Both the position numbers and the translations under genes were made by a program. DNA of 64,000 nt from Octopus sinensis (lineage: Eukaryota), in contig NC_042997.1 of the NCBI RefSeq assembly GCF_006345805.1, forward strand, positions 180,296,001 to 180,360,000. Direction: 5' to 3'. The notes below the pieces were generated by a model. The model saw only the letters and a list, made by a program, of their open reading frames with translations, was not told the DNA's origin and ran no database searches. Below are positions 7,056 through 63,960 of this stretch, piece by piece. How positions within the stretch are numbered: position 1 is the first letter of the stretch; each line of letters opens with the position of its first letter.

Positions 7056-7200
7056 TTATGTGGACCTGTTTCTACACTGGCATAATAGTCTCAGATTCCT
7101 CAGATTTCAACTTGACCAGGTTCATGAAGGAACCTGATGAAGAAGATGCGCAAGCCGAAACTTTAACGTCACTGCCAATCTTTTCGTTGAAAAATGTAAT
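7056..7200 (-). pseudogene. Second, diverged copy of the coding-like segment (LRNLRLLCQCRNRST*)
   Basis: 6960-7110 aligns with 6030-6165; in-frame TGA just upstream; SINE inserted at 7216. Confidence 0.3.
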
Positions 7201-7215
7201 ATATGCATGTGTATA

Positions 7216-7382
7216 GGCGCAGGAGTGGCTGTGTGGTAAGTAGCTTGCTAACCAACCACATGGTTCCGGGTTCAGTCCCATTGCGTGGCATCTTGGGCAA
7301 GTGTCTTCTGCTATAGCCCCGGGCCGACCAATGCCTTGTGAGTGGATTTGGTAGACGGAAACTGAAAGAAGCCTGTCGTATA

Positions 7383-7451
<69 letters not shown>

Positions 7452-7672
7452 TTGTGTGTCTGTGTTTGTCCCCCTAGCATTGCCTGACAACCGATGCTGG
7501 TGTGTTTACGTCCCCGTCACTTAGCGGTTCGGCAAAAGAGACCGATAGAATAAGTACTGGGCTTACAAAGATTAAGTTCCGGGGTCGATTTGCTCGACTA
7601 AAGGCGGTGCTCCAGCATGGCCGCAGTCAAATGACTGAAACAAGTAAAAGAGTAAAGAGAGTAAAAGAGTAT
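7216..7672 (+). mobile_element. tRNA-derived SINE, family A (ggcgcaggagtggctgtgtgg..) with internal TA/TG microsatellite
   Basis: A/B-box-like head, CORE-like ttgggcaagtgtcttc, 3' end ggcggtgctccagcatggccgcagtcaaatgactgaaacaagtaaaagag; many copies in window. Confidence 0.93.
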
Positions 7673-8555
7673 GCAGTTTGCAAGTTTATTGATTGTTCAG
7701 TGTATTGCAAAAGAGATAAAGATAATTTCATATTCCCTCAGTGAAGTGTATTTGAGTTCATTAGAATAAAGTATATCTCTGTAATGGCGGATGTAAATGC
7801 CTGTTGGTTGATTGTTTCTCAAGATAGACTTAATATCCAATAGGGTGATTGAGCGAGAGATAGAGAAATTGAGAGATAGAGAGGGGGAGAGAGAGTGTGT
7901 GTGAATGAGATATTCAGAGCAATTTAATGTAAAAGTTGAAGTCGAAAGAGGAACATAGAAATTAAAATTTAGTGACTGGGGAATAATAAGGATTGAAATT
8001 TGCGTAGTCAATAGACAGTTAACACATGACACACGCTTACACACACTGCGTGCAATCTTCTGTCCTTGACTCCCACACATCCACACATGCACGAACATAA
8101 TTACAGATAAACTAGAAGGATTATCTTGACAAGCATCCGTTAGGAAGTGTTAAAGTAGCAGTAAGTTTATTATTGTGTATGTACATGTCTGTGTGTGTGT
8201 GTGTGTACTCATGTGTAGGCATATATGCTTATGATTTTCTGTTAAATAATAGCATCGTATGGTTACTCTAGTCGTTCTTTACGCAGTATAAAGAAAAGGG
8301 CTGAGTACATTGGAGTTACACAAAACGGCGCAGGATGAGAAAATACACTGGTGTTTGTGTCAAGCAAAGAGTAAAGGATTACCTCACAGAGTGATTGAGT
8401 GGGTAAGAATCGCTCAGAAACCGGTGTATTATGAGTATAGTGAGTAAATGGTAGTTAGCTGTCGCTGAAAAACACTCCGAGTTTTTAATATTAGTGCTAT
8501 GAATTTTTTCCTTAGAAACCTTTGAAATTAATTGTTCGATACATACATACATACA

Positions 8556-8586
<31 letters not shown>

Positions 8587-8704
8587 GAGAGGGATGACTA
8601 CTATGTGGACAACCCTCATGCTAGAAGTAGATCCTCTATGGTCTTACCACAAAGAAATTTTCTCGTGAAAATTTAGAAAATACCACAACTTTATATATAT
8701 ATAT

Positions 8705-8880
8705 ATAGTTAATCCAAACAAGGAAGCACCAAAATAAAACACAACAACGCGAGGACGTGGAACAAATATAGTATTATTGGACGCTCAGGAAAGAAGGAAA
8801 GAAGGAGGGTATAACGTTTCGAGCGGAGCTCTTCGTCGGAAACATAGGAGAAAGAAAGATCCAGAGAAGGGAAGACAGAG
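8705..8880 (-). mobile_element. Penelope-like terminal fragment with minimal HHR-like motif (8812-8843)
   Basis: Minus strand reads ccgacga-a-gagc-tcc-gctc-gaaac-gtta; adjoins a TA microsatellite. Confidence 0.65.
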
Positions 8881-8934
8881 GGAAAAAAATCACCAACGGT
8901 ACACATGCGGTCACAGAGAGAGAGAGATGGGAGA

Positions 8935-8979
8935 GATAGATAGATGGATAGATAGATAGATAGATAGATAAATAGATAA

Positions 8980-9063
<84 letters not shown>
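8935..9063 (+). repeat. (GATA)n microsatellite
   Basis: Direct reading. Confidence 0.98.
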
Positions 9064-9065
<2 letters not shown>

Positions 9066-9514
9066 TGAGAATAGTCGCTACCCATGAACTTATTTAAGAC
9101 TATCCCTTCTACTACTGCTACTACAACCACAAAAGTACACTGTGTGTCTACTTGGCCATTAAAACAGATTACACGGACAGCCTTTACTTCTTCGACTGCT
9201 GCTACTTAAACCATCAAGCTTCACACCCAAAAATATCTTAGCACCCGGAAAGACATTTTTTCAGATCTGCAGCAACCTACTTTTAGAACCTTCACAGAGA
9301 AAAAGAGATAGAGAGACAGAAAAGAAAGAAAAATGTCCTACGTATGTGAAGACAATGGAAATATTTAGAAAACATTTCATTTAATTTTCTCTTCAATTTA
9401 ACTGTTTTTCTTCTTTGTTAGAATAAAGTATATCTATATAATAGTGTACATAAATGCCTGTAAGTTGATTGATTTCTCAAAATATCCAATAGGATGATGT
9501 AACGAGAGACATAT

Positions 9515-9552
<38 letters not shown>

Positions 9553-9728
9553 TAAATGAGATATTCAGAGCAATATCCACCTGTGTTTTACTCTTAGTTG
9601 AAAAAGTTGAAAAGACAGAAACCTTTAGTAATCACTGCAAAATGTATTTCATGATAAAATTATTTTACCATTTTCTACTAAGTCTTATTTTCCTTATACA
9701 TATCAACTCGTGTGTCACTTTTCAAAAT

Positions 9729-9878
<150 letters not shown>

Positions 9879-10930
9879 TTGTGAACTTACGGATTCAAAG
9901 CTAACTTTTCCTAATTTCCTAATGTATATATCACAAGAATTTCTGCAGTAATATTAACAGTTTTGCCACCATGGTTAATACAAGGAAACGAAGCATTAAC
10001 AGAATAACCATAATTAAACTCTATCAAATTAGGGTTACACTCAAGTTTCAAATAATATTTATGCATTCATTTAATTTCATCTTTTCCTGTATACGGTAAC
10101 ACGCTAGCAGCGTATATTATAGCTGGGTAAATCTCTATAGAAATAGCTATGCGATTTATCTCTCATATATGCGTTGCATTAAAAAATAAATAAAAACTTT
10201 GTAGCATTTTACTGTTATGACAATGAGATAGTTATTTGATAGTGACAACACATTCTATAATGAAGGCATATTTTTTTAGTTTTAGAGATAATTATTCGTA
10301 CCTCTGCATCTGAACACCAATTTTACTGTCAATTAAATTTATTTTTCTTTCTTTTGATAATTTACATAAAATTGTTGTATTTCTCAACCAGGCAAAGTGT
10401 ACATCGTTTTTATATATATATTAGTAAATAGTGTTGTGGTCCCAATTATAGATACAGTTCTATGATCCCGATTATTGATAGAATGCTGTGGACAAAACAG
10501 AAATAACGCTGATGTCTCAATTATTGTCATGTTATCATGTACATATTCTCCTGTTCCCAGCAAACCTGAAAGTGTGAAAGAAAATTTTATCTTTAGATAT
10601 CAGCTCTTGAGAGCAGTGCGTCTCCTGGTTTTGAATATGTGCTTTTAAATTTTTATGCAGCTTCATTTGATGACATCTAGGGAACTAGTTTTCCTTGCTA
10701 CACAGTCTTTGGGAAACACATATCATTAAACAGTCAGAAACTCGCTTCATACAATCGTTTTCTGGTTGCAATTCCGGCGTTACTCAGTTGTTCAAAATAT
10801 TATTTTACATTCAATGAATACAGATTGAGTTTTCCCAAGTAAATAAGGTTATTGCTATGTTATGCATATTAAGTAGTTTGTAATAGAGAGTCACATGCAA
10901 AAGTTACTTTCTGAAAGTTATATCATTATA

Positions 10931-10976
<46 letters not shown>

Positions 10977-10998
10977 ATAATATATTATTTTGTATATA

Positions 10999-11157
10999 TC
11001 CTTTTTTCTCTCCTTGTTTTTTCTGTGCACCTTTCTGTAGAAGAGCGTAGGCTCGAAACGTAAAATACTTTTTCTATTCCTGAGCGTTATACTAATACAT
11101 CTGTTTGTTTTGTACACCACCTGTCTCCGTCTTTTGTGTTTTTCGTAATTTTCCCTA
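10999..11157 (+). mobile_element. Penelope-like terminal fragment with HHR-like motif (11031-11066)
   Basis: cttt-ctgtaga-a-gagc-gtag-gctc-gaaac-gta-aaa; embedded in TA microsatellite; inverted sister copy at 13386-13545. Confidence 0.7.
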
Positions 11158-11515
11158 TATATATATATATATTATATATAATATATATATATATTATATA
11201 TATATATAGATATATATATATATATCATATATATATATACATTATATATATACATATATATACATATATACATATATATATATACATATATATACATATA
11301 TACTATATATATATACATATATATATACATATATATATACATATATATATACATATATATATATACATATATATATACATATATATATATATACATATAT
11401 ATATATACATATATATATACATATATGTATATATATATACATATATATACATATATATATATACATATATATATATACATATATATATAATATATATATA
11501 CATATATATATATAC
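11157..11515. repeat. TA/TACA-rich compound microsatellite
   Basis: Direct reading. Confidence 0.97.
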
Positions 11516-11794
11516 ATTAAAAAAGGGGTAGAATTAATTAATTGTTAATCAATTCGACCAAGCAGTATTCGGTATGTGAAAGGACCATTTACGGTATATT
11601 TGAAGTATTAATTTATAAAAATATGGTAAAGTAAAAAAATTCACTTTACCACACACCGAACTTTTCGGAAATAGCAGCCAAAAATTTGGCTATTTCTTCA
11701 ACTGCAAATAAAAGTCTCCAGATAATGCATACTCAGAAAATAACTCACATAGGTATAAGGGAAAAACAATGAAAGATCACATCCATATAAGATA

Positions 11795-11856
11795 CCCGAG
11801 GACAGCCTGTTTCTGGATTCGTGGGTTAAACGCCACTTTTCCTTCATCAGCTCAGA
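11795..11856 (-). ncRNA. Type I hammerhead ribozyme motif
   Basis: Reverse complement of the 12592-12653 motif; all core nucleotides present. Confidence 0.8.
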
Positions 11857-12591
11857 GATTTCTTCTGATTTAGATTTGAAAATACTAAGAATCAAACATA
11901 CCCGTCCGATATTTGTAACATCGGACAAACCATGCCAGACACCCAGTACTAGCGAATCCAAAAATACAAATGAGATCTATTATTCTCCCTGTCCACCCAC
12001 GTGAGTCATAGAGTAGTACATTCCTACAGAGGCAAAAACTGTAGTTCAAATTCTTGGAGAGAAAGCATTATATTGTCATTAAAAAAGGGGTAGAATTAAT
12101 TAATTGTTAATCAATTCGACCAAGCAGTATTCGGTATGTAAAAGGACCATTTACGGTATATTTGAAGTATTAATTTATAAAAATATGGTAAAGTAAAAAA
12201 ATTCACTTTACCACACACCGAACTTTTCAGAAATAGCAGCCAAAAATTTGGCTATTTCTTCAACTGCAAATAAAAGTCTCCAGATAATGCATACTCAGAA
12301 AATAACTCACATAGGTATAAGGGAAAAACAATGAAAGATCACATCCATATAAGATACCCGAGGACAGCCTGACAATATAATGCTTTCTCTCCAAGAATTT
12401 GAACTACAGTTTTTGCCTCTGTAGGAATGTACTACTCTATGACTCACGTGGGTGGACAGGGAGAATAATAGATCTCATTTGTATTTTTGGATTCGCTAGT
12501 ACTGTGTGTCTGGCATGGTTTGTCCGATGTTACAAATATCGGACGGGTATGTTTGATTCTTAGTATTTTCAAATCTAAATCAGAAGAAATC

Positions 12592-12653
12592 TCTGAGCTG
12601 ATGAAGGAAAAGTGGCGTTTAACCCACGAATCCAGAAACAGGCTGTCCTCGGG
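12592..12653 (+). ncRNA. Type I hammerhead ribozyme motif
   Basis: Stem I tctgag/ctcggg; CUGAUGA at 12598-12604; stem II gga..gtgg/ccac..tcc; GAAA at 12635-12638; stem III ACAG/CUGU with 1-nt loop; GUC triplet at 12645-12647. Confidence 0.8.
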
Positions 12654-12861
12654 TATCTTATATGGATGTGATCTTTCATTGTTTTTCCCTTATACCTATG
12701 TGAGTTATTTTCTGAGTATGCATTATCTGGAGACTTTTATTTGCAGTTGAAGAAATAGCCAAATTTTTGGCTGCTATTTCCGAAAAGTTCGGTGTGTGGT
12801 AAGTGAATTTTTTTACTTTACCATATTTTTATAAATTAATACTTTTTATATATATATAAAC

Positions 12862-13385: not shown

Positions 13386-13387
<2 letters not shown>

Positions 13388-13539
13388 GGAAAGTTTACGA
13401 AAAAACAAAAGACGAAGACAGGTGGTGTACAAAACAAACAGATGTATTAGTATAACGCTCAGGAATAGAAAAAGTCTTTTACGTTTCGAGCCTACGCTCT
13501 TCTACAGAAAGGTACACAGAAAGAAATAGGAGAGAAAAA

Positions 13540-36270: not shown

Positions 36271-37584
36271 AAAACATGTAAATATTTACAGTAATGTTTT
36301 GTAAAAATTCATCATTTACTAGGTGTCTGTTTTGCGAGAAATGTAAGGTTTTATGTTTTCGATGCCATATGACTGAAAACTAGCGAAGATGTACGCACGC
36401 TTACTGGGATGTAAATTATTCGTCATTTCATCATCTTGCAACTTACAAGATTAAAACGTCATGTGTAATCTATCACAGCTCAGTAGTAATGTAGTATTGT
36501 TAAAGTTTTCCAGGTTCAACGTTTATTTTTAAGGAAACTTTTTTAAGTTCTAAATGTTGGAGGAAGTCTTATCGTCGAGATAAAAATCCATAATATGAGA
36601 AATTAAAAATAATATTTCACTTTTTTATGCCTATATAGACTTAAATATGTGAAATACCTTCAGAAGTACATCATTCGTTTTTGAGAAGAAGCTAGCTTTA
36701 ATGAAAAAAAAAGGAAAAACATACCTTTGACATCATGTAGTAATGGTATTGCCATAAAAAAGGCAAAATATGCACTGTCGTCAAATAAGTAAACTGCTGC
36801 ATGCAGAAAAATTAGAATGTAATATGGTTGTTATATTGTCTTCTTCACATCAGCTAGAATTTAGTAATTTGCACATTATTCCGAGCTTACAGCTGCCGAG
36901 TGTGAGAATTATTAAAAAGTAAATTACATAAATCTCTAAAATAATTCACATTATTACAGGTAATTATTTCCTAAGCTTAATATTTTCATGTTTTTATTTT
37001 AAATCAATTGTTTAAGTAATGTTCCTAAGGTCGTTATATTCAGATGATTTGTTCTTTAATTAACCAGAGTTCATCTCTTTTTAAACAAAAATTAATTTTT
37101 CACGTGCTGCAGATTACATCTGGAAAATAAACTTTTCCAATATAGGGAAGGTACACATATACACACAGCTATGTGTAAATATGTGTGTGAGCGTGTGCGT
37201 GTGTGCGTGTGCGTGTGTGTGAAATTTTTTAAGGTTATCTCAAGCGATTTTCTCTACAAATTAGAACCAGTACTGATTCGTTTCGATGTTGCGCATACGA
37301 ATACGTCTATTGTAAAGAATGCGATTGACGACAGAAAAGAATGTAATGGCTTATATCCATATTTCAGTTCTTGCTACAGAAAATATGTAGAGATAAAATT
37401 AAGAAATAAATTAATAGCACTCCTAACACAAGCATGGTACAATATTGACTCATAAGAGTTTAATTAACTCAGCAGTATATAATGGTTGCATAACGAAATA
37501 TCCTTACTAGCAATTAATATATGTACGTACGTACGTAAGTATGTATATATGTATGCATGCATTATGTATGTCATTATTCGGTTT

Positions 37585-37689
37585 TATTTTAAGATTTCTT
37601 GCCAATGAAGAAAGAGCCGTTTCTAACCTAGATCTCAGACTCTTTCATTGTATATTTCAACAATATCAACAGTGTATTATTGTATGTAT
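37585..37689 (-). mobile_element. Distal 3' UTR of the RLE-LINE whose ORF end lies at 38392-38700
   Basis: Minus strand ttggcaagaaatcttaaaataaaac matches ttggcaagaaatcttgaaataaaac at 58012-58037. Confidence 0.75.
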
Positions 37690-38148
37690 GTTGTTGTTGG
37701 CATCCTTTTCAGTTCCGCATAAACTAATCCAGTCTGTTTTGTTTTTGCATTTCATGTCCTCTCCAGTTTTGCGCAGGCCTGGGCTACATGTAAGAAAATC
37801 GTGGGTAGCCCAATCGTCAGGATTCCTCTCCAGACATTGCTGACGTAGTCCAAAGGAGTGCAGAGCATTACGTTTGGCACCAGCTTGGTTGCAGAAGCTG
37901 CCGGAAGAGTGTCGAGTCGAACACTAAACCGCCTACAGGGCTCCACTCCGGATTTCTTTGAAGGTTGCCTCCTTTCTGTAATCCTGGATAGGGACCCATA
38001 CCGAATACTGTCAGCCGGAGCCAGCTGATCCGGAGACTCATGTCAGGCAGGGTCGTCACTCCCTGAAGTAGTGAAGAAAATTGCTACCCACTACCTAAAG
38101 AAATATGGAACGCTTCACGAATTTGTGTATCATCCTAGCGCAGGAGTC

Positions 38149-38181
<33 letters not shown>

Positions 38182-38199
38182 AATATGTACCGCCGTAGC
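37690..38199 (-). mobile_element. U6-headed, RTE-related short retroelement with (CAA)n tail and TSD
   Basis: U6 head 38199-38101; GC-rich body containing ctcttccggcagcttctgcaaccaagctggtgccaaacgta (RTE-type 5' UTR, from recall); tail caacaacaac; TSD tattat(t)gtatgtat at 37675-37689 and 38200-38213. Confidence 0.8.
38101..38199 (-). pseudogene. U6: U6 snRNA copy, nearly full length
   Basis: Minus strand ..ctaaaattggaacgatacagagaagattagcatgactcctgcgctaggatgatacacaaattcgtgaagcgttccatattt; ACAGAGA box intact, ~8 substitutions, first ~6 nt missing; upstream is microsatellite, with no PSE/TATA seen. Confidence 0.95.
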
Positions 38200-38700
38200 T
38201 ATTATGTATGTATGTATGTATGTATGTATGTATTTATGTATGTATGTATGTATGTATGTATGTATGTATGTATGTATGTATATATGTATGTTTGTATATA
38301 CGTATGTAAGCATATGTGCAGATTTGTATGTTTTGTTTTATGTATGTATTCTCACGCATATTCTTGTATATCTAGACATGCTCAGGGATACTTAAATAGT
38401 AAACTTCTGGAAAGTTTTAAAGAGTTTTACAATTCCAATGATGGCTTGGATGTGTAGTCTTCGAATCAACTTTCTTCTTTCAGGTTTTGAGAAGCCTAAT
38501 GTCTCAAGATTGGTATTTAGGCAGTGTGTTACATATCCCAGTACCCCAATATTCACAGGTATAAACTTGAACTTGTAAGCTGCATAGACTAGCAGTAGAT
38601 TCCTCGATAGTTCAGTGTATTTTCTGTCTTTGCTGACATTTAGCTTTAAGCTAATATCCGCTGGGCACTTGATTTCCACAACTGTACACACATTTATTTT
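38200..38700 (-). mobile_element. RLE-type LINE 3' end (endonuclease C-terminus, 3' UTR, TACA tract)
   Basis: VVEIKCPAD..KYTELSRNL..FIPVNIGVLG..KTFQKF; paralogue at 57543-57833. Confidence 0.85.
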
Positions 38701-38859
38701 TGCATGTATGTATGTATGTATGTATGTATGTATGTATGTATGTTCACGGTTACCAATGCACAAAATACAGTTCAAATGGTGATAAGTTGACTTTCGTTCC
38801 ATAAAATCTACAGCTGTTGTACAATTTTTACCTATCTGTACCTGACAGCGTCAGCAGTA

Positions 38860-45035: not shown

Positions 45036-45424
45036 CATTTACTTGTTTCAGTCATTTGACTGCGGCCATGCTGGGGCACCGCCTTTAGTCGATCAAATCG
45101 ACCCCGGAACTTATTCTTTGTAAGCCCAGTACTTATTCTATCGGTCTCTTTTGCCGAACCGCTAAGTGGCGGGGACGTAGACACACCAGCATCGGTTGTC
45201 AAGCAATGCTAGGGGGACAAACACAGACACACAAACACACACACACACATATATATATATACGACAGGCTTCTTTCAGTTTCCGTCTACCAAATCCACTC
45301 ACAAGGCATTGGTCGGCCCGGGGCTATAGCAGAAGACACTTGCCCAAGATGCCACGCAGTGGGACTGAACCCGCAACCATGTGGTTGGTTAGCAAGCTAC
45401 TTACCACACAGCCACTCCTGCGCC
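45036..45424 (-). mobile_element. SINE family A, full length
   Basis: Reverse complement of the 7216-7672 family. Confidence 0.94.
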
Positions 45425-45774
45425 TATAGTTACAAATGTCAATTCGTTTGTATAAATAACAGGTTTGCGCATAGGTCATAACGCTGGAAAAACGATGACG
45501 TAAACGATTTTGACGTAAGAAAAGAAAATATTAAAACAAAATACGATAGTAACGACCAAGTATATGATCATGATGCTGTGGTTCTGTAACCATTGCTGTT
45601 GCTTGTTGTACTGCTAGTAATGATTGTGTTCATTGTGGTACTGATACAGTTGCTGCTAATGAATGTGATCGCACTGAGGATTTAATAATTTTGATGTTGA
45701 CACGAAGATGATAATGAGGATCATTAACATTGAGATGATGTAGACGATGATTTCAGCATCTGCTGCCGCTGTTG

Positions 45775-46710: not shown

Positions 46711-47933
46711 CGCGCGCATTTATTATTTATTATTGTGACTAATTTAATACTAATTATAACATTGTTGATGTTGATGCCGTTGCGGTTGTGTAACCTCAGT
46801 TTAGCCTTCATCGAACAAGCCATTGCTACACCTGTAGCTTGTCGAACTACGAGTTAACCCACAGACAATCATCTTCTTAGTTTTGTCATGCCACCTCATA
46901 GCTGATTAGTATCATGCCCACCTATATGCAGTTATTAATCTCTTTGAATGCATATTAAAAGATGGTCAGTGATGGACGTGATTATATATGGCTGTAGACC
47001 CTGGATGAATTGTTCCATTTTCACTGTTATTGTTGGGGTATATAAGCCAGTGTAATAATTATAGGCAGTAGAGCGGTCGATGTTACAAATATTTTTATTG
47101 ATATGTTTCTTTTGCTTGACAAAGATGAACGCTTCTGGGAGTAGGATGAACATTAGGATAGATGGAGGTGACTTTTACATGCACTGATAAGTACAGTGCG
47201 AATTGAATACGGATCCTACAGCAAAGTGTATCCTGAATATGACCAATGGATTCTTTAGTTTTAGCATTCTTGGTTCGTTGTGTATACATGAGTTATATAC
47301 AATGTGATAAAATGCGTAGTGCGCTATTGTGGATTATAATTATAGATTATGAAAAGGGTTGAAATAGCACAATCAGGGAGAACTAGCAAAATCCATGGTG
47401 GATTTAATGTATTTCTTGCACACTGTTGAATTGATTGCCAAAGTAAATTTCTTCATTGTTTTACAGATATAACCATCCTTGCGTATTGTGACTATTGTGT
47501 TTAGGTAAAATAGATTTATTAATCGTTTTGTATTCTCTACTTTATATGGTTTTTAGTAGATGACATTACAAGGTCTGATAAGGGCATTCATATGACAAAA
47601 GCTGTATGAGATATTCTTTGATGTCGACACTACGTTATGGTTTGAAATGGCTATTGTTATCGATGCTGCTAATTACATAATATATGATATTTTATTGTTC
47701 ATTTTGTGGTTTATGTAGTTTGCAGCTGTTGATAGTTATTGCACTGAAAGGACAACAGCGAGTATATTGAGATAATGAAGAAGATAGGAGAAAGAGGGGA
47801 AAAAGGAGGAGATGGAATTAAGATTGATGGAGACTAACAAGCAATAGTCCAGAAGCTTGTTCTTAACTGCAGAAATAGAAGTGCGGTTAACATGTTCGCT
47901 TCTTCGGTATATGTTACCGTGTTTGATCACATA

Positions 47934-48232
47934 GGCGCAGGAGTGGCTGTGTGGTAAGTAGCTTGCTAACCAACCACATGGTTCTGGGTTCAGTCCCACT
48001 GCGTGGCACCTTGGGCAAGTGCCTTCTACTATAGCCTCGGGCCGACCAAAGCCTTGTGAGTGGATTTGGTAGACGGAAACTGAAGGAAGCCCGTTGTATA
48101 TATGTATATATATATATATATATATGTGCGTGTGTGTTTGTGTGTATGTGCTTGTCCCCCTAGCATTGCTTGACAACCGATGCTGGTGTGTTTATGTCCC
48201 CGTTACTTAGCGGTTCGGCAAAAGAGTAAAGA
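47934..48232 (+). mobile_element. SINE family A, 3' part deleted
   Basis: Head and body match 7216; jumps to the aaagagtaaagag tail. Confidence 0.92.
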
Positions 48233-48418: not shown

Positions 48419-48733
48419 TTAGCCCACCGCCTTCAGCTTCTCTGACGTCTTCTTTGTACGATGTGCTAGCGCGCTGTCATAGTGGTAAAATATCTTCTTC
48501 AAATTTGCGCGATTTTTGGCCTGTGCGATCTTTAGATTGTCGATTTGTTCATAGTAGACATCCTTGTAAACGTTGGTATTGCGTGGGAGAAGATCCAACA
48601 TGGTCACACCACGACAATCCCACCAAACTGAGATCATAACCTTCTTTTGCACAAGCGGTACTTTTGGCGAAGGTTTTGGCTGTTGGCCTTTGCTACACCA
48701 GGATCCTTTGCGCCTGTGAGCAGACTTTGACAT
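48419..48733 (-). mobile_element. Mariner transposase catalytic-region remnant
   Basis: RKGSW..KKVMISVWWDCRGV..LLP..YYEQ..HYDSALAHRTKKT resembles mariner KVMLSVWWD..HDNARPH; the N-terminal HTH and first Asp are absent. Confidence 0.85.
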
Positions 48734-48788
48734 GCACGGAACGTGCTTGTTTGTTCGCTTCAGTCAAAGCTTGCTGACCTTGCCGAGT

Positions 48789-57309: not shown

Positions 57310-58045
57310 AGTTAACACAGAAGATATCATACGCGTCATAAGCAGTTGTCCGAAAATGTCATCATGATATTATCTACCGATGAGACATGATGTTGAGACT
57401 AGAACATTATATAATGAAATCCGACGGAAGGATTACCCTGAAGACAAAGAAGTAGGAACTCACCGTATCGTAGAAGCCATCACCGCTCATAATAAATAGG
57501 AGTAGTGATTGAATGTCCCAGTAAAAAACCTCAGTAACGTGTGTGGAAATTAGCTGCCCAGCGGATGATAACATAATACAGAAGATCAAGGAAAAAGGGA
57601 ATGCCTTCTCTGAGCTATCGAGAAATCTGCAGTTACTCTATCCAGATTACATGTTCAGATTTACACTTGTAATTATTAGGGCACTAGGATATATAGCACA
57701 CTGCCTAAATACTAATCTGGAAAAATTAGTCTACTTAAAATCAGAAAAGAGAAAGCTGATTCGAAGACTACAGATGTACGCCATCACTGGATCATTAAAA
57801 ATCTATAAATCTTTTCAGAAGTTTATGATTTAAATTTCTATGAGCATAACTAGTAATTCAAGTAGATGCATGAAATGACATACATAAAATAAAACATACA
57901 AATCTGCACGTATACATACATGCATTCATACATACAAAAATACCCAGATGTTGATGTTGAAATTGCAAATGAAGAAGTCTTGGATCTTAGTCAAAAACAA
58001 GGTCCTTCAGTATTGGCAAGAAATCTTGAAATAAAACTGTAAGAA
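57310..58045 (+). mobile_element. RLE-type LINE 3' remnant, same family as 38200-38700
   Basis: EDIIRVISSCPKMS..YYLPMRHD knuckle region; EISCPAD..IIRALG..KSFQKF; shared 3' UTR. Confidence 0.87.
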
Positions 58046-58223
58046 TGGCATACACAACGCTTTTTTGACAACAGGCTAGGTTACAATGAGAGTTTCCAAA
58101 TTAGGAACAGATTACTTCAATTTGATTAGGGATATTGCAAAGCGAAGGTTTTCACGTTACTGAACAAAATATTGGGCAAAACTGACTGGTATATGCTTGA
58201 TGTAGACAGACATCGGGTTAAAG

Positions 58224-58403: not shown

Positions 58404-59285
58404 GGTTAGATGAGGAAAAACACCAGGGTAAACTTTTTTTGAATTTGTGCAAATGACAGAGATATTGAGGGGAAAGAGAAAAGAAAAAGAGCAGAGAATG
58501 ATCTAATTACATTGGAAACAAAACGTCAAAATATGTTTCTGTTTTGTATTTTTACATCATCAGCAGTGCCTCATTAAGATTTTCGTTTTAGACAACAACT
58601 AATTCATCATTCTACTTTCATTTGGAGAAGGATATATGTCAAGAAAATTTACATTTCCCTACTACTGTATTTATGCTTTTCGTATTTAAATAATTTCCCT
58701 TACCCGACACATCTAATATTCTCGACACGCTAAGTTACTCGTACAAAACGTGTGACTCATGGTAAAATTAATATTATTTTCTCATTTACTCCTGATGTCA
58801 GCTATTCCATAATATCAAAATGAACAGACTCAAAATATTAACATATTTTGATAAAAAAAAATATGTAAGCTATTCCTTAATATCAATTTGAACAGAATGA
58901 AAGTATAAACATATTTTAATGAAAACAAATTATAGACTCATGTGAAAAACATATTCAAGGTAGCCCAAAATCAAAGTAAATCTGAAAAAAAAAGAAACAT
59001 TAACAGACAACCCGAAATATTAACATTTAATTTTGTCTGATTTCATCAACTTCATTTACATTGTATTTGTGTGTATTGGATATTTAAACAACTATATCAG
59101 ATTCTACAAAGGTAGTTTTCAGGAAAACACAAACATCGTACAGTGTTACAATTTGAATATCGTGAATCGAACAATTAATATCCCTCTAGATATGCTTAAA
59201 ATCTAAGACGTAATGAATGCAGCAATTCGAATAAAATCACTTGGTCTTAAAGTTTGGATTTTTTGCCAACAATTTACGATTTATA

Positions 59286-59708
59286 GGCGCATGAGTGGCT
59301 GTGTGGTAATTAGCTTGCTTACCAACCACATGGTTCCGGGTTCCGTCCCACTGCGGGGCATCTTGGGCAAGTGTCTTCTGCTATAGCCTCGGGCCGACCA
59401 AAGCCTTGTGAGTGGATTTGGTAGACGGAAACTGGAAGAAGCCTGTCGTATATATGTATATATATATATATATCTGTGTGTGGGGGGGAGTTTGTGTGTT
59501 TGTGTTTGTCCCCCTAGCATTGCTTCACAACCGCTGCTGGTGTGTTTACGTCCCCGTTACATAGCGGTTCGGCAAAAGAGACCGATAGAATAAGTACTGG
59601 GCTTACAAAGAATAAGTTCTGGGGTCGATTTGATCGACTAAAGGCGGTGCTCCAGCATGGCCGCAGTCAAATGACTGAAACAAGTAAAATAATAAAAGAG
59701 TAAAAGAG
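59286..59708 (+). mobile_element. SINE family A, full length
   Basis: Matches 7216-7672. Confidence 0.94.
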
Positions 59709-61771: not shown

Positions 61772-62012
61772 TTTAATCTTTTACTTGTTTCAGTCATGTG
61801 ACTGTGGCCATGCTGGTGTACCGCCTTTAGTGGAGCAAATCGGCCCCAGGACTTATTCTTTGCAAGCCTACTACATATTCTATCTGCCTCTTTTGCCGAA
61901 CAGCTAATTTACGGGGACGTAAAAACACCAGCATCGGTTGTCAAGCGATGGTGGGGGGAAATACACAGACACATAAACACACACACATACACGTACATGC
62001 ACACACACACAC

Positions 62013-62107
<95 letters not shown>

Positions 62108-62265
62108 CATACATATATACGGCGGGTTTCTTTCAGTTTCCGTCTACCAAATCCACCCAGAAGGATATAGTAGAAGACACTTGCCCATGGTGGCACGCAG
62201 TGGGACTGAACCCGGATCCATGTGGTTGGTAAGCAAGCTACTTACCACACAGCCACTCCTATGCC
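61772..62265 (-). mobile_element. SINE family A, older copy with expanded TA tract
   Basis: Reverse complement of family A head and tail. Confidence 0.9.
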
Positions 62266-63507
62266 TAATGTATATACTAATGCATTCATACACACATACA
62301 TGGATAGGGGTTTCGTACGTGTGTATGTGTGTGTGCGCGCGCATGTGTGTGTTTCTGAGTGCATGCGTGTGTATGTGAGAAAGGGTGTGAAAGTGTATGA
62401 TGAGTTTGCGAAAGCTGGAATGGAATTTACATACGTTTCAGAAACATGCATGTGCGTCTGTGAAAGCGTGCATGTAAATGTGAGAATTGAAGGGATTACG
62501 TGCATACAATTAATTAAGCGTTTAAAAAATACTACTACCTCGCAATAAGAAAAGCATTTCAATTGATAGTCCGTTGTACATATTTATTATGTTGCTCTTA
62601 TTCTCATTATAAATTTAGTATTTCATATAAAGTGGTTTTCGTTTCCAAATAAATAAACAGAATAACTAGCATGTGTCATACGTCACACACACACACATGC
62701 ACAGGAACACACATACGCTCACACACATACACACACACACCCACACTCGTGTATAGCTATGAGTATTTGTTTGTGTTTAATAAGGAGCCCGTGTATTGTT
62801 TTCTATAATAACCTGTTCGTCCTAATGGTAACAGCGCGTACATTTTCCTAATTAGAATATTTCTGACGTCACTTTAAATCGAAATGATCCACAAGTATAT
62901 CCGCGTTGTTATTCAGATTTAATTCCCAAGAAGACTGCTAATTACAGCTGCTCTGTTTAGAGAAACGAACGAATTCAAGAGTTCTGCTAATTACAGCTGT
63001 CAGGAAAACCACAATATAAAATGTTTAACCAAATAAAAAACAAAATATATATATAAGCGTGTGTATATGCGTGTGAGAGGAAGACACACAGATTGACTGA
63101 CTGACTGACAGATAGACAGGGTTTGAGCATAGAGGAAGATTGTGACGTAGGCAAGACATCCATGGTGCCTAACAGCAATATGAGGCATTCAACGAGTACA
63201 ACTGAATCGAACGAAGAGGCACATACAGAGATTGTGACAGAAGGAATGAAGGAATTATTCTGAAATATATCAGTTTTATATGCTGAACTAATAATATATT
63301 TTATATCATTTACATAAGACTTATTGAGATAAAAAGTCAGAGAGAAATTTTAGTGCAAAAATCATAATTTTGACATGTCTTTGGAACCGTCAAAAGCTTG
63401 TTTATTTTTATGTCTTTATTATTTGTTATTAGTGTTACTTAATATCTTTTGCTAAAATTGCTGTTTCTTTTCAGATATCATCAGAAAAAGTATTTAATTT
63501 TATTAAA

Positions 63508-63960
63508 ATGACAGATTTATCGAACTTTCAAAGAAGTCAAATTGATTGCGCTCGTATGGCAGGCGTTAGCGTAACGAAAACAGCCGAAATGTGATGACAA
63601 CCTTTGAGAAAAATGGAAAAACCTCCTTGTGGAAACAAATCTCCGGAAGAAAACCAAAACTTTCAGAAAGGGACCGTCGGATTCTTACACGAATTGTTAG
63701 GGCGGATCAGAAAAGTACAGCTCCCAAAATTACTGCAGAGCTTAATGACCACCTCGAGAAACCAGTTTACACAAGATCTGTTCGCCGGGAGCTGCATAAA
63801 GCCGGATTTCACTGAAGGGCTGCAATCAGAAAAAACAACTAATTTCAAAAACAAACGTTGCAAAGCGTTTAAAGTGGAAGCACTGGAAGAATGTTATTTT
63901 CTCAGATGAGTCATCCTTTACCTTATTTCCGACTCCTGGCCGAGCATATGTGTGGAGAAT
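63508..63960 (+). mobile_element. Tc1-like transposase pseudogene, running to the window edge
   Basis: GRKPKLSERDRR.L.RIV..ITAELN..VRRELHKAGF; FSDESSF with the first catalytic Asp; stops and deletions present. Confidence 0.9.

What the first reader, a model, noticed from the sequence alone, without database searches (positions are those of the whole stretch)
37675..38213. U6 snRNA-headed, RTE-related SINE-like element with TSD
A discrete 510-bp unit consists of nearly full U6, an RTE-type 5' UTR segment, a very short 3' part and a (CAA)n tail. It is flanked by a 14-15-bp TSD inside the TACA tract of another LINE. One-off U6/LINE chimeras normally join U6 to a 5'-truncated LINE 3' end. U6 fused to a 5' UTR in an internally deleted bipartite body instead suggests an amplifying family with a U6 head. 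Metazoan U6 uses an external promoter, so how such an element would be transcribed is an open question. I do not know of a described U6-headed SINE family in this group.
Basis: partly seen in the sequence, partly recalled or inferred. Interest (0 to 1): 0.8.

Follow-up and report, generated by a model that had tools for sequence, protein, structure and literature searches.

The report
U6 fused to a shortened RTE-like element
An old, dead retrocopy in an octopus genome joins the spliceosomal U6 RNA to an internally deleted piece of an RTE-like jumping gene; this is most likely a single copying accident of a kind already known from vertebrates, not a new family of mobile elements.

Summary
On the minus strand there is a 510-bp unit (38200-37691). 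It consists of a near full-length U6 (Rfam 93 bits), a 399-bp body and a (CAA)3 tail, flanked by a 14/15-bp target-site duplication. Two paralogous "empty" copies of the host repeat confirm that it is one discrete insertion.

The core of the body (37972-37755) is homologous (E = 3e-54) to a conserved non-coding block in the 5' UTR of an RTE-like LINE group: endonuclease plus reverse transcriptase in one ORF, with a 3' UTR of about 40 bp. I found this group in a crab, in marine metagenome contigs and in other assemblies. The rest of that UTR and the whole ORF are missing from the window, so "internally deleted" holds.

The inference of an amplifying U6-headed SINE family is not supported, and I could not test it, because no Octopus genome can be searched in bulk with these tools.
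- U6 chimeras with RTE-type LINEs and with short non-autonomous partners are already published.
- A U6-less deletion derivative of the same design exists in another genome.
- None of the related LINE 5' ends examined carries U6.
- The copy is about 10% decayed.

Best reading: a one-off chimera made by template jump or RNA ligation, about 0.65. A U6-headed family remains possible, about 0.2.

The parts
38201..38214 (-). 5' copy of the target-site duplication, CATACATACATAAT
   Evidence: Read directly. Its boundary agrees with two empty paralogous sites (alignment A2).
38099..38202 (-). U6 snRNA-derived head. It is near full length and keeps its 3' U-run, which now reads TTTCTTT. It is decayed: 6 mismatches at 63 near-invariant consensus positions.
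   Evidence: Rfam RF00026, 93.3 bits, E = 9.8e-23, model 1-105. Mismatch count.
37973..38098 (-). First 126 nt of the body, with no detectable relative. Its first ~15 nt (TTAGGTAGTGGGTAG) weakly resemble the motif at which the target-duplication-bounded LINE copy in L007 begins.
   Evidence: It lies outside the independent profile hit. The motif alignment is A4: weak, an inference only.
37755..37972 (-). Conserved non-coding block of the 5' UTR of an RTE-like LINE group
   Evidence: nhmmer E = 3.4e-54 with a profile that excludes Octopus. 82% nucleotide identity to L003/L010/L011 and 73-79% to L004-L009, L012-L014. In L007 the block lies upstream of an Exo_endo_phos + RVT_1 ORF. No codon periodicity.
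37700..37754 (-). A-rich 55-nt 3' segment, presumed to be the 3' end of the Octopus partner LINE that its reverse transcriptase recognises
   Evidence: The profile homology ends at 37755, whereas the other species' UTRs run on for about 245 more model positions. No similarity to the other species' LINE 3' ends or to anything else in the window. The origin is inferred, not shown.
37691..37699 (-). (CAA)3 tail
   Evidence: Read directly. No other related (CAA)n-tailed element in the window.
37676..37690 (-). 3' copy of the target-site duplication, CATACATACAATAAT
   Evidence: Read directly. The two BLAST segments overlap on the empty paralogue at 57927-57942. See also alignment A2.
37559..38680 (-). 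Host: a 5'-truncated 3' end of another retroelement (C-terminal ORF ending at 38395), interrupted by the U6 unit. Its internal (CATA)n at 38203-38308 has 26 units only in this copy.
   Evidence: Paralogues at window 57542-58060 and L001 10173-10586. Tandem repeat. The only protein relative is an Octopus vulgaris hypothetical protein, P0001.

Best explanation
This is a single chimeric retrocopy.

An Octopus RTE-like LINE supplied the reverse transcriptase. The template was the RNA of an internally deleted, non-autonomous derivative of that LINE: part of its 5' UTR joined to a short 3' end with a (CAA)n tail. Reverse transcription was primed at a nick at the edge of a CATA microsatellite inside another retroelement (target-primed reverse transcription).

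On reaching the 5' end of this short template, the enzyme jumped to the 3' end of a U6 snRNA and copied it almost to its 5' end. Alternatively, U6 had already been ligated to the 5' end of that RNA before copying. Second-strand synthesis then left a 14-15-bp target-site duplication.

The copy was dead on arrival as far as its U6 head is concerned. The head brings no internal promoter, and its own U-run lies between head and body. The copy has since decayed by about 10%.

Shown here: the parts, their order and orientation, the discreteness of the insertion, the RTE-like 5' UTR origin of the core, and the internal deletion.

Inferred: the template jump or ligation, the identity of the partner LINE, the origin of the last 55 nt, and that the event was unique.
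For: - U6 is complete at its 3' end and abuts the body directly, in the same orientation, with no A-rich tail between them. One duplication flanks the whole unit.
- Two empty paralogous sites show a single 510-bp insertion.
- The core of the body is homologous to the 5' UTR of an RTE-like LINE group at E = 3.4e-54. That group has a single APE + RT ORF, a 3' UTR of about 40 bp and a 14-bp target-site duplication.
- A deletion derivative of the same design, without U6, exists in L008.
- No U6 was found in any related LINE-bearing locus.
- The literature reports U6 chimeras made by template switching with L1, L2 and RTE-type LINEs and with their SINE partners (PMC4476161). It also reports U6 ligated to partner RNA by RtcB before retrotransposition (PMC6789731, abstract).
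- There are 6 mismatches at 63 near-invariant U6 positions, and one difference between the two duplication copies. This fits an old neutral copy, about 28 My at 0.0036 per site per My.
- No other copy exists in 84 kb of Octopus DNA.
Against: - Uniqueness of the junction was not tested, because no Octopus genome could be searched in bulk.
- The 2026 O. vulgaris repeat annotation lists one uncharacterised 'SINE/U' family covering 369 kb, with 19 young full-length insertions averaging about 730 bp (PMC13282606). That is roughly the size expected for U6 plus a full ~600-nt RTE 5' UTR plus a short 3' end. A multi-copy U-headed family may therefore exist in the genus.
- The U6 U-run here is TTTCTTT, with no run of four T. 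Pol III read-through into the body is therefore not excluded for this copy.
- The Octopus parent LINE and its 3' end were not recovered.
Confidence: 0.65

Rival explanations
1. This is one decayed member of an amplifying, U6-headed, RTE-mobilised non-autonomous family, comparable to the U1/U2-headed SINEU families. The chimera arose once and then became a master copy.
For: - SINEU shows that families headed by snRNA genes that have no internal promoter can amplify (PMC4494074).
- O. vulgaris has an undescribed 'SINE/U' family covering 369 kb, with young copies of about 730 bp.
- The body is a complete short unit with a LINE-type tail rather than a randomly truncated LINE 3' end.
- The U6 terminator is broken (TTTCTTT).
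Against: - There is only one copy in 84 kb of Octopus DNA.
- Searches of the protein collections with the body returned relatives from other hosts but nothing close enough to be an Octopus copy. This is weak evidence, because Octopus non-coding DNA is hardly represented there.
- No U6 was found in any related LINE-bearing locus.
- U6 carries no internal promoter in metazoans (established knowledge). Any promoter in the LINE 5' UTR would start transcription downstream of U6, so the head would be lost in daughter copies.
- The 'SINE/U' label was assigned automatically and may refer to U1 or U2.
Confidence: 0.2
2. U6 was fused to a longer, perhaps full-length, RTE-like LINE copy in one retrotransposition event. 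The 5' UTR remainder, the ORF and most of the 3' region were then lost by a later genomic deletion at this locus.
For: The profile homology stops abruptly at 37755. Old insertions do suffer deletions. No independent evidence was found that an Octopus deletion-derivative family exists.
Against: It needs an extra event of more than 3 kb that happens to spare the tail and the 3' duplication copy. A retrotransposed deletion derivative of the same design exists in another genome (L008), and that origin is the simpler one.
Confidence: 0.08
3. There were two independent insertions: a mini-RTE copy landed first, and a U6 retropseudogene later landed exactly at its 5' edge.
For: Nested insertions are common in this repeat-rich genome (for example the host repeat itself).
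Against: There is no second duplication and no tail between U6 and the body. U6's own U-run abuts the body, and one duplication brackets the whole unit. Stringent LINEs are reported to make U6 copies only as chimeras.
Confidence: 0.03

Closest known systems
U6/LINE chimeric retrocopies made by template switching (Buzdin 2002/2003; Garcia-Perez 2007; Doucet 2015, PMC4476161), or by RtcB ligation of U6 to the partner RNA before reverse transcription (Moldovan 2019, PMC6789731)
   Same: U6 in sense orientation at the 5' end and complete at its 3' end. It is fused directly to a LINE-derived sequence that ends in the LINE's own type of tail. One target-site duplication flanks the whole. Partners already reported include RTE-type LINEs (RTEX-2 in Anolis) and short non-autonomous elements (AnolisSINE2, Mon-1).
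   Different: The host is a cephalopod; I found no report of such chimeras outside vertebrates and fungi in the papers I searched. The partner is an internally deleted LINE derivative that keeps a 5' UTR block, not a 5'-truncated LINE 3' end or a tRNA-derived SINE.
SINEU families of crocodilians (Kojima 2015, PMC4494074)
   Same: A head derived from an snRNA gene whose promoter is external, probably acquired by template switch. How such an element is transcribed is an open question.
   Different: SINEU heads are U1 or U2, not U6. SINEU is shown to be multi-copy (about 1,000-7,700 copies) with shared junctions and subfamilies. Only one copy is known here.
Internally deleted non-autonomous LINE derivatives. 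The example found here is L008 in assembly ERZ25071792, where the 5' UTR is joined to the last 53 bp of the same RTE-like LINE group.
   Same: The body has the same bipartite design: a 5' UTR part plus a very short 3' end.
   Different: The deletion break-points differ. In Octopus the break follows profile node 479, so less of the UTR is kept. The L008 copy has no U6.
MINE of Magnaporthe grisea (Fudal 2005; Gogvadze 2007, PMC2104539)
   Same: A chimera of a cellular non-coding RNA and a LINE part, attributed to template switching.
   Different: MINE is an established repeated family in a fungus, with a different RNA partner.

Membership tests
U6/LINE chimeric retrocopy (snRNA pseudogene 'Group IV' of Doucet et al. 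2015) | U6 sequence in sense orientation at the 5' end of the unit, intact at its 3' end | tested here: met
   Rfam U6 model 1-105, 93.3 bits, followed by a U-run.
U6/LINE chimeric retrocopy (snRNA pseudogene 'Group IV' of Doucet et al. 2015) | Direct fusion to LINE-derived sequence in the same orientation | tested here: met
   37972-37755 matches LINE 5' UTR profile nodes 264-479 on the same strand as U6, E = 3.4e-54. In L007 that UTR precedes an APE + RT ORF on the same strand.
U6/LINE chimeric retrocopy (snRNA pseudogene 'Group IV' of Doucet et al. 2015) | A single target-site duplication brackets the whole chimera | tested here: met
   A 14/15-bp duplication, plus two empty paralogous sites.
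U6/LINE chimeric retrocopy (snRNA pseudogene 'Group IV' of Doucet et al. 2015) | The 3' end is that of the mobilising LINE | tested here: inconclusive
   A (CAA)3 tail and an A-rich 55-nt segment are present. The Octopus partner LINE was not available, and no match was found to the other species' 3' ends.
Amplifying SINE-like family with an snRNA head (SINEU-like) | Many copies that share the same head/body junction at different loci, each with its own duplication | not testable with these tools
   No Octopus genome can be searched in bulk. There is one copy in the 64-kb window plus 20 kb of O. vulgaris. A metagenome scan for the junction found nothing.
Amplifying SINE-like family with an snRNA head (SINEU-like) | Head derived from an snRNA gene | tested here: met
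   Rfam U6.
Amplifying SINE-like family with an snRNA head (SINEU-like) | The unit can be transcribed as a whole, head included | not testable with these tools
   The sequence gives only hints. The U-run is TTTCTTT, with no run of four T. No tRNA, 5S or 7SL-like internal promoter module was detected by Rfam or ARAGORN.
RTE clade of non-LTR retrotransposons (origin of the body) | A single long ORF with an N-terminal apurinic-type endonuclease and a reverse transcriptase, no separate large ORF1, an element of about 3-4 kb and a very short 3' UTR | tested here: met
   L007 copy, 5'-truncated at 7889: ORF 8557-11684 with Exo_endo_phos + RVT_1, 3' UTR about 40 bp, 14-bp target-site duplication. L008 and L009 show the 5' UTR reaching back to 7675, which puts a full-length element near 4.05 kb. 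This was tested on relatives from other hosts, not on an Octopus LINE.
RTE clade of non-LTR retrotransposons (origin of the body) | The reverse transcriptase groups with RTE-clade references in a phylogeny | tested here: inconclusive
   No reference set was available. The best matches among solved structures, L1 ORF2p and R2, gave 37-44 bits. CR1, L2, Jockey and I clades were not compared.

The most novel reading that the evidence does not exclude
The unit is an old member of a still undescribed U6-headed, RTE-mobilised non-autonomous family in Octopus. That family might be the automatically labelled 'SINE/U' family (369 kb) of the 2026 O. vulgaris annotation. It would be the first SINE-like family with a U6 head. 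It would have to propagate either by read-through of a crippled U6 terminator or from flanking promoters.
Probability: 0.2. Interest if true: 0.7.

Novelty: new member of a known kind. Interest (0 to 1): 0.35.

Why it matters
If it is a one-off, it extends the known habit of LINE reverse transcriptases to pick up U6. That habit is documented for L1, L2 and RTE-type elements of vertebrates. This would add a cephalopod RTE-like element, and a partner that is an internally deleted LINE keeping a 5' UTR block. That is a useful data point for the generality of template jumping or U6 ligation, but it is not a surprise.

It would matter more if the junction proves to be multi-copy. A U6-headed family would add a fifth kind of small-RNA head to SINE biology. 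It would also sharpen the open question, raised by SINEU, of how heads without internal promoters are transcribed.

A by-product may be worth more than the finding itself. The RTE-like group carries a roughly 220-nt non-coding 5' UTR block, inside an even longer conserved UTR, at 73-82% nucleotide identity in hosts as far apart as an octopus and a crab. Its function is unknown, and gene callers mis-annotate it as protein.

Tried and rejected
- BLASTN of the unit against the window: no other copy.
- Word-indexed protein searches with the 96-aa body ORF and with a six-frame concatenation: no hits. The index-free HMMER search then found 50 relatives. The first two negatives were therefore a sensitivity limit, not absence.
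- Rfam at permissive E-values over 37500-38400 and over the related 5' UTRs: only U6 plus microsatellite-driven miRNA noise. No HDV-like ribozyme, tRNA, 5S or 7SL. ARAGORN: no tRNA in the window.
- A home-made HDV-like double-pseudoknot descriptor: no hit in the Octopus unit or at the LINE 5' ends. One internal hit in L010 was not shared by the other loci; 9 of 200 shuffles of the Octopus unit gave at least one hit. No positive control was run, so this negative is weak.
- RNA folding of the body and of its 3' end: z = 0.06 and 0.21, no sign of unusual structure.
- Coding test of the conserved block: no third-position excess, so it is not a small ORF1.
- Search for other (CAA)n-tailed relatives in the window: none.
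- Alignment of the last 80 nt to all related loci: nothing.
- Metagenome scan for the junction: 0 hits. The scan for an internal 20-mer gave one hit (L002). It is a chance match inside a protein-coding transcript.
- k-mers of the body in the stored part of the O. vulgaris transcriptome supplement of PMC9115989: none.
- Look-up of the window's own host-repeat ORF in the assemblies: not on record.
- The apparent U6-like string in L003 (TCGGCAGCACATA) is probably a chance resemblance. It lies where the related sequences place the LINE UTR, and Rfam finds no U6 in that locus.

Full report
**What is there.** All coordinates are on the minus strand.
- Rfam finds one U6 in the window, at 38202-38099: 93.3 bits against a gathering score of 44, E = 9.8e-23, covering the whole model.
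- U6 ends in its U-run (now TTTCTTT) and runs straight into a 399-bp body, 38098-37700. The body has about 52% GC in a window of about 35% GC.
- A CAACAACAA tail follows at 37699-37691.
- The unit is bracketed by CATACATACATAAT (38214-38201) and CATACATACAATAAT (37690-37676).

**It is one discrete insertion.**
- The flanks 38680-38283 and 37690-37559 are two halves of a repeat that occurs uninterrupted at 57542-58060 in the same window. The two BLAST segments overlap there by 16 bp, which is the duplicated target.
- A protein profile of the host's C-terminal ORF found a single relative, a hypothetical protein of Octopus vulgaris. This places the window in the genus Octopus. Its locus L001 holds a third copy, also uninterrupted.
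- Alignment A2 shows both empty copies running across the insertion point.
- The CATA tract is therefore an internal microsatellite of the host's 3' region, not its tail. It has 26 units only in the filled copy.

**What the body is.**
- The body has no second copy in the window. Rfam and ARAGORN find nothing in it, and its predicted folding energy is ordinary.
- Two word-indexed protein searches found nothing. The index-free HMMER search with the 96-aa open frame of the body found 50 short 'proteins', the best at 5.8e-18 and 65% identity. They come from ENA, Logan, JGI and NCBI assemblies, and one is from the crab Petrolisthes cinctipes.
- Fetching their contigs showed what they are. In L007 the homologous stretch lies upstream of a 3.1-kb ORF with Exo_endo_phos and RVT_1 domains. 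This copy starts at 7889 and ends near 11722 (3.84 kb). It has a 3' UTR of about 40 bp and a 14-bp target-site duplication.
- L009 is a second, 99.4% identical copy, cut off at its 3' end (aligned only to 11552). L008 and L009 show the 5' UTR reaching back to 7675, 214 bp further than L007, so the L007 copy is 5'-truncated and a full-length element would be about 4.05 kb.
- L010, L012 and L013 show the same UTR followed by the start of the endonuclease.
- This is the RTE architecture. It scores 37-44 bits against L1 ORF2p and R2 among solved structures. I did not have the references for a proper phylogeny.
- A DNA profile built only from the other species' 5' UTRs hits the window once, at 37972-37755. 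It matches nodes 264-479 of 723 with E = 3.4e-54, and hits nothing else in the window or in L001.
- The other UTRs run on for about 245 more conserved positions and then into the ORF. The Octopus unit instead switches at 37754 to 55 unrelated A-rich bases and the tail.
- The body is thus an internally deleted derivative: part of the 5' UTR joined to a short presumed 3' end.
- The conserved block shows no codon-position periodicity (0.263, 0.219, 0.209). It is non-coding, and the 'proteins' are gene-caller artefacts.

**Does the anatomy imply a U6-headed family?** I do not think so, for six reasons.
1. Doucet et al. found U6 chimeras with L1, L2 and RTE-type LINEs (three with RTEX-2 in Anolis). 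They also found chimeras with short non-autonomous partners (six with AnolisSINE2; Mon-1 in platypus). They conclude that stringent LINEs make U6 copies only as template-switch chimeras.
2. With a template of only about 400 nt, the reverse transcriptase will usually reach the 5' end before it jumps. A junction at or near the partner's 5' end is therefore the expected outcome. The first bases of the body resemble the motif at which the duplication-bounded L007 copy begins. That similarity is weak.
3. The same LINE group has, in another genome, a copy made of the 5' UTR joined to the last 53 bp, without U6 (L008). The bipartite design arises on its own.
4. Rfam found no U6 or any other family in about 110 kb of related LINE-bearing loci.
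5. Metazoan U6 has no internal promoter (established knowledge). Its U-run lies between head and body, and a promoter in the LINE UTR would start transcription downstream of U6. Daughter copies would tend to lose the head.
6. The U6 part has 6 mismatches at 63 near-invariant positions (9.5%, Jukes-Cantor 0.10). At the 0.0036 per site per My used for Octopus, that is about 28 My. The two duplication copies differ by one base. This is what an old neutral one-off looks like.

**What keeps the family idea alive.**
- I could not count the junction genome-wide. The collections open to DNA search hold no cephalopod genome. Octopus DNA could be reached only by exact protein look-up, which gave one 20-kb locus.
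- The 2026 repeat annotation of O. vulgaris lists one automatically classified 'SINE/U' family covering 369,490 bp. It has 19 insertions that are at most 2% diverged and at least 90% full length, totalling 13,954 bp, or about 730 bp each. That is close to U6 plus a ~600-nt RTE 5' UTR (the size given for RTE-2_OV) plus a short 3' end. The label may equally reflect U1 or U2.
- The U-run in this copy has no run of four T.
- SINEU shows that families headed by promoter-less snRNA genes can exist.

**Mechanism, with the steps marked.**
- Shown: the order U6, 5' UTR block, short 3' segment, (CAA)3; all parts in one orientation; one duplication; an empty target in the paralogues.
- Inferred: target-primed reverse transcription by an RTE-like enzyme on a mini-RTE RNA. 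This was followed by an end-to-end jump to U6, or preceded by ligation of the 2',3'-cyclic-phosphate end of U6 to the 5' end of that RNA, as shown for U6/L1 (abstract of PMC6789731).
- A ribozyme-generated 5'-OH would make such ligation attractive. I found no HDV-like fold with Rfam or with a simple descriptor that had no positive control.

**Verdict.**
- The family inference is unproven and less likely than a one-off.
- I rate the best explanation at 0.65, the U6-headed family at 0.2, an in-situ deletion of a longer chimera at 0.08, and two nested insertions at 0.03.
- Novelty: a new member of a known kind, namely a U6/RTE-type chimera, here in a cephalopod and with a deletion-derivative partner.

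Noticed in passing
window 37755-37972 (-); L003, L004 8014-8409, L005 12481-13027, L006 8077-8444, L007-L009 ~8005-8450, L010 ~1030-1560, L012, L013, L014: The 5' UTR of this RTE-like LINE group contains a long non-coding stretch conserved at 73-82% nucleotide identity. The hosts are as distant as an octopus, a crab and unidentified marine eukaryotes. There is no codon periodicity and no Rfam match. Gene callers turn it into 60-240-aa 'hypothetical proteins' (for example KAK3875478.1 of Petrolisthes cinctipes). Its function (promoter, IRES or structured RNA) is unknown. Horizontal transfer is a possible reason for the spread.
   Followed up: partly
L008 7675-8561 (ENA ERZ25071792, ctg18731): An internally deleted copy of the same LINE: 837 bp of 5' UTR joined directly to the last 53 bp of the element. 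It lies next to a separate 5'-truncated 3' end at 9550-9956.
   Followed up: partly
window 38203-38308: The (CATA)n microsatellite inside the host repeat has about 26 units only in the copy that received the U6 unit. The two empty paralogues have 3-5 units. Either it expanded after the insertion or the insertion favoured a long tract.
   Followed up: no
L001 10001-10327 (O. vulgaris OX597824.1): The annotated 'hypothetical predicted protein' P0001 of O. vulgaris is an ORF that runs from a microsatellite into a 5'-truncated copy of the host retroelement. It is an annotation artefact.
   Followed up: partly
window 38395-38850 (-) and 57525-57830 (+): The C-terminal ORF of the host repeat (…CPAD…KYxELSRNL…IPVxIGxLGYV…) looks, from memory, like the restriction-like endonuclease end of an R2/R4/Dong-type LINE. 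Pfam gave no hit, so the clade is untested.
   Followed up: partly
window 11634-12078 and 12370-12814: A large inverted repeat: 445-nt arms, 99% complementary, 291-nt spacer. It is nested in a second pair at 11042-11156 / 13386-13500 (93%). It could be a foldback element, the terminal inverted repeats of a transposon, or an assembly artefact.
   Followed up: no
window 7075-7516, 45089-45478, 47739-48191, 59284-59556, 61831-62375 and others: There are many copies of one SINE, whose spurious translation reads …[27 protein letters not shown]…. Each sits next to CA/TA-type microsatellites. The same SINE occurs several times in L001.
   Followed up: no
window 48422-48763 (-) and 63570-63812 (+): Fragments of mariner/Tc1-type transposases: Pfam Transposase_1 at 3e-19, and HTH_Tnp_Tc3_2 below its cut-off.
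   Followed up: no
window 38260-38320, 37512-37585: The Rfam 'mir-297', 'mir-1277' and similar sub-threshold hits are products of the TA/CA microsatellites, not miRNA genes.
   Followed up: yes
L002 1444-1463 (JGI Ga0307386_10016823): An exact 20-mer match to the body lies inside a repeat-containing protein-coding transcript of a marine eukaryote. It does not extend and is a chance match.
   Followed up: yes
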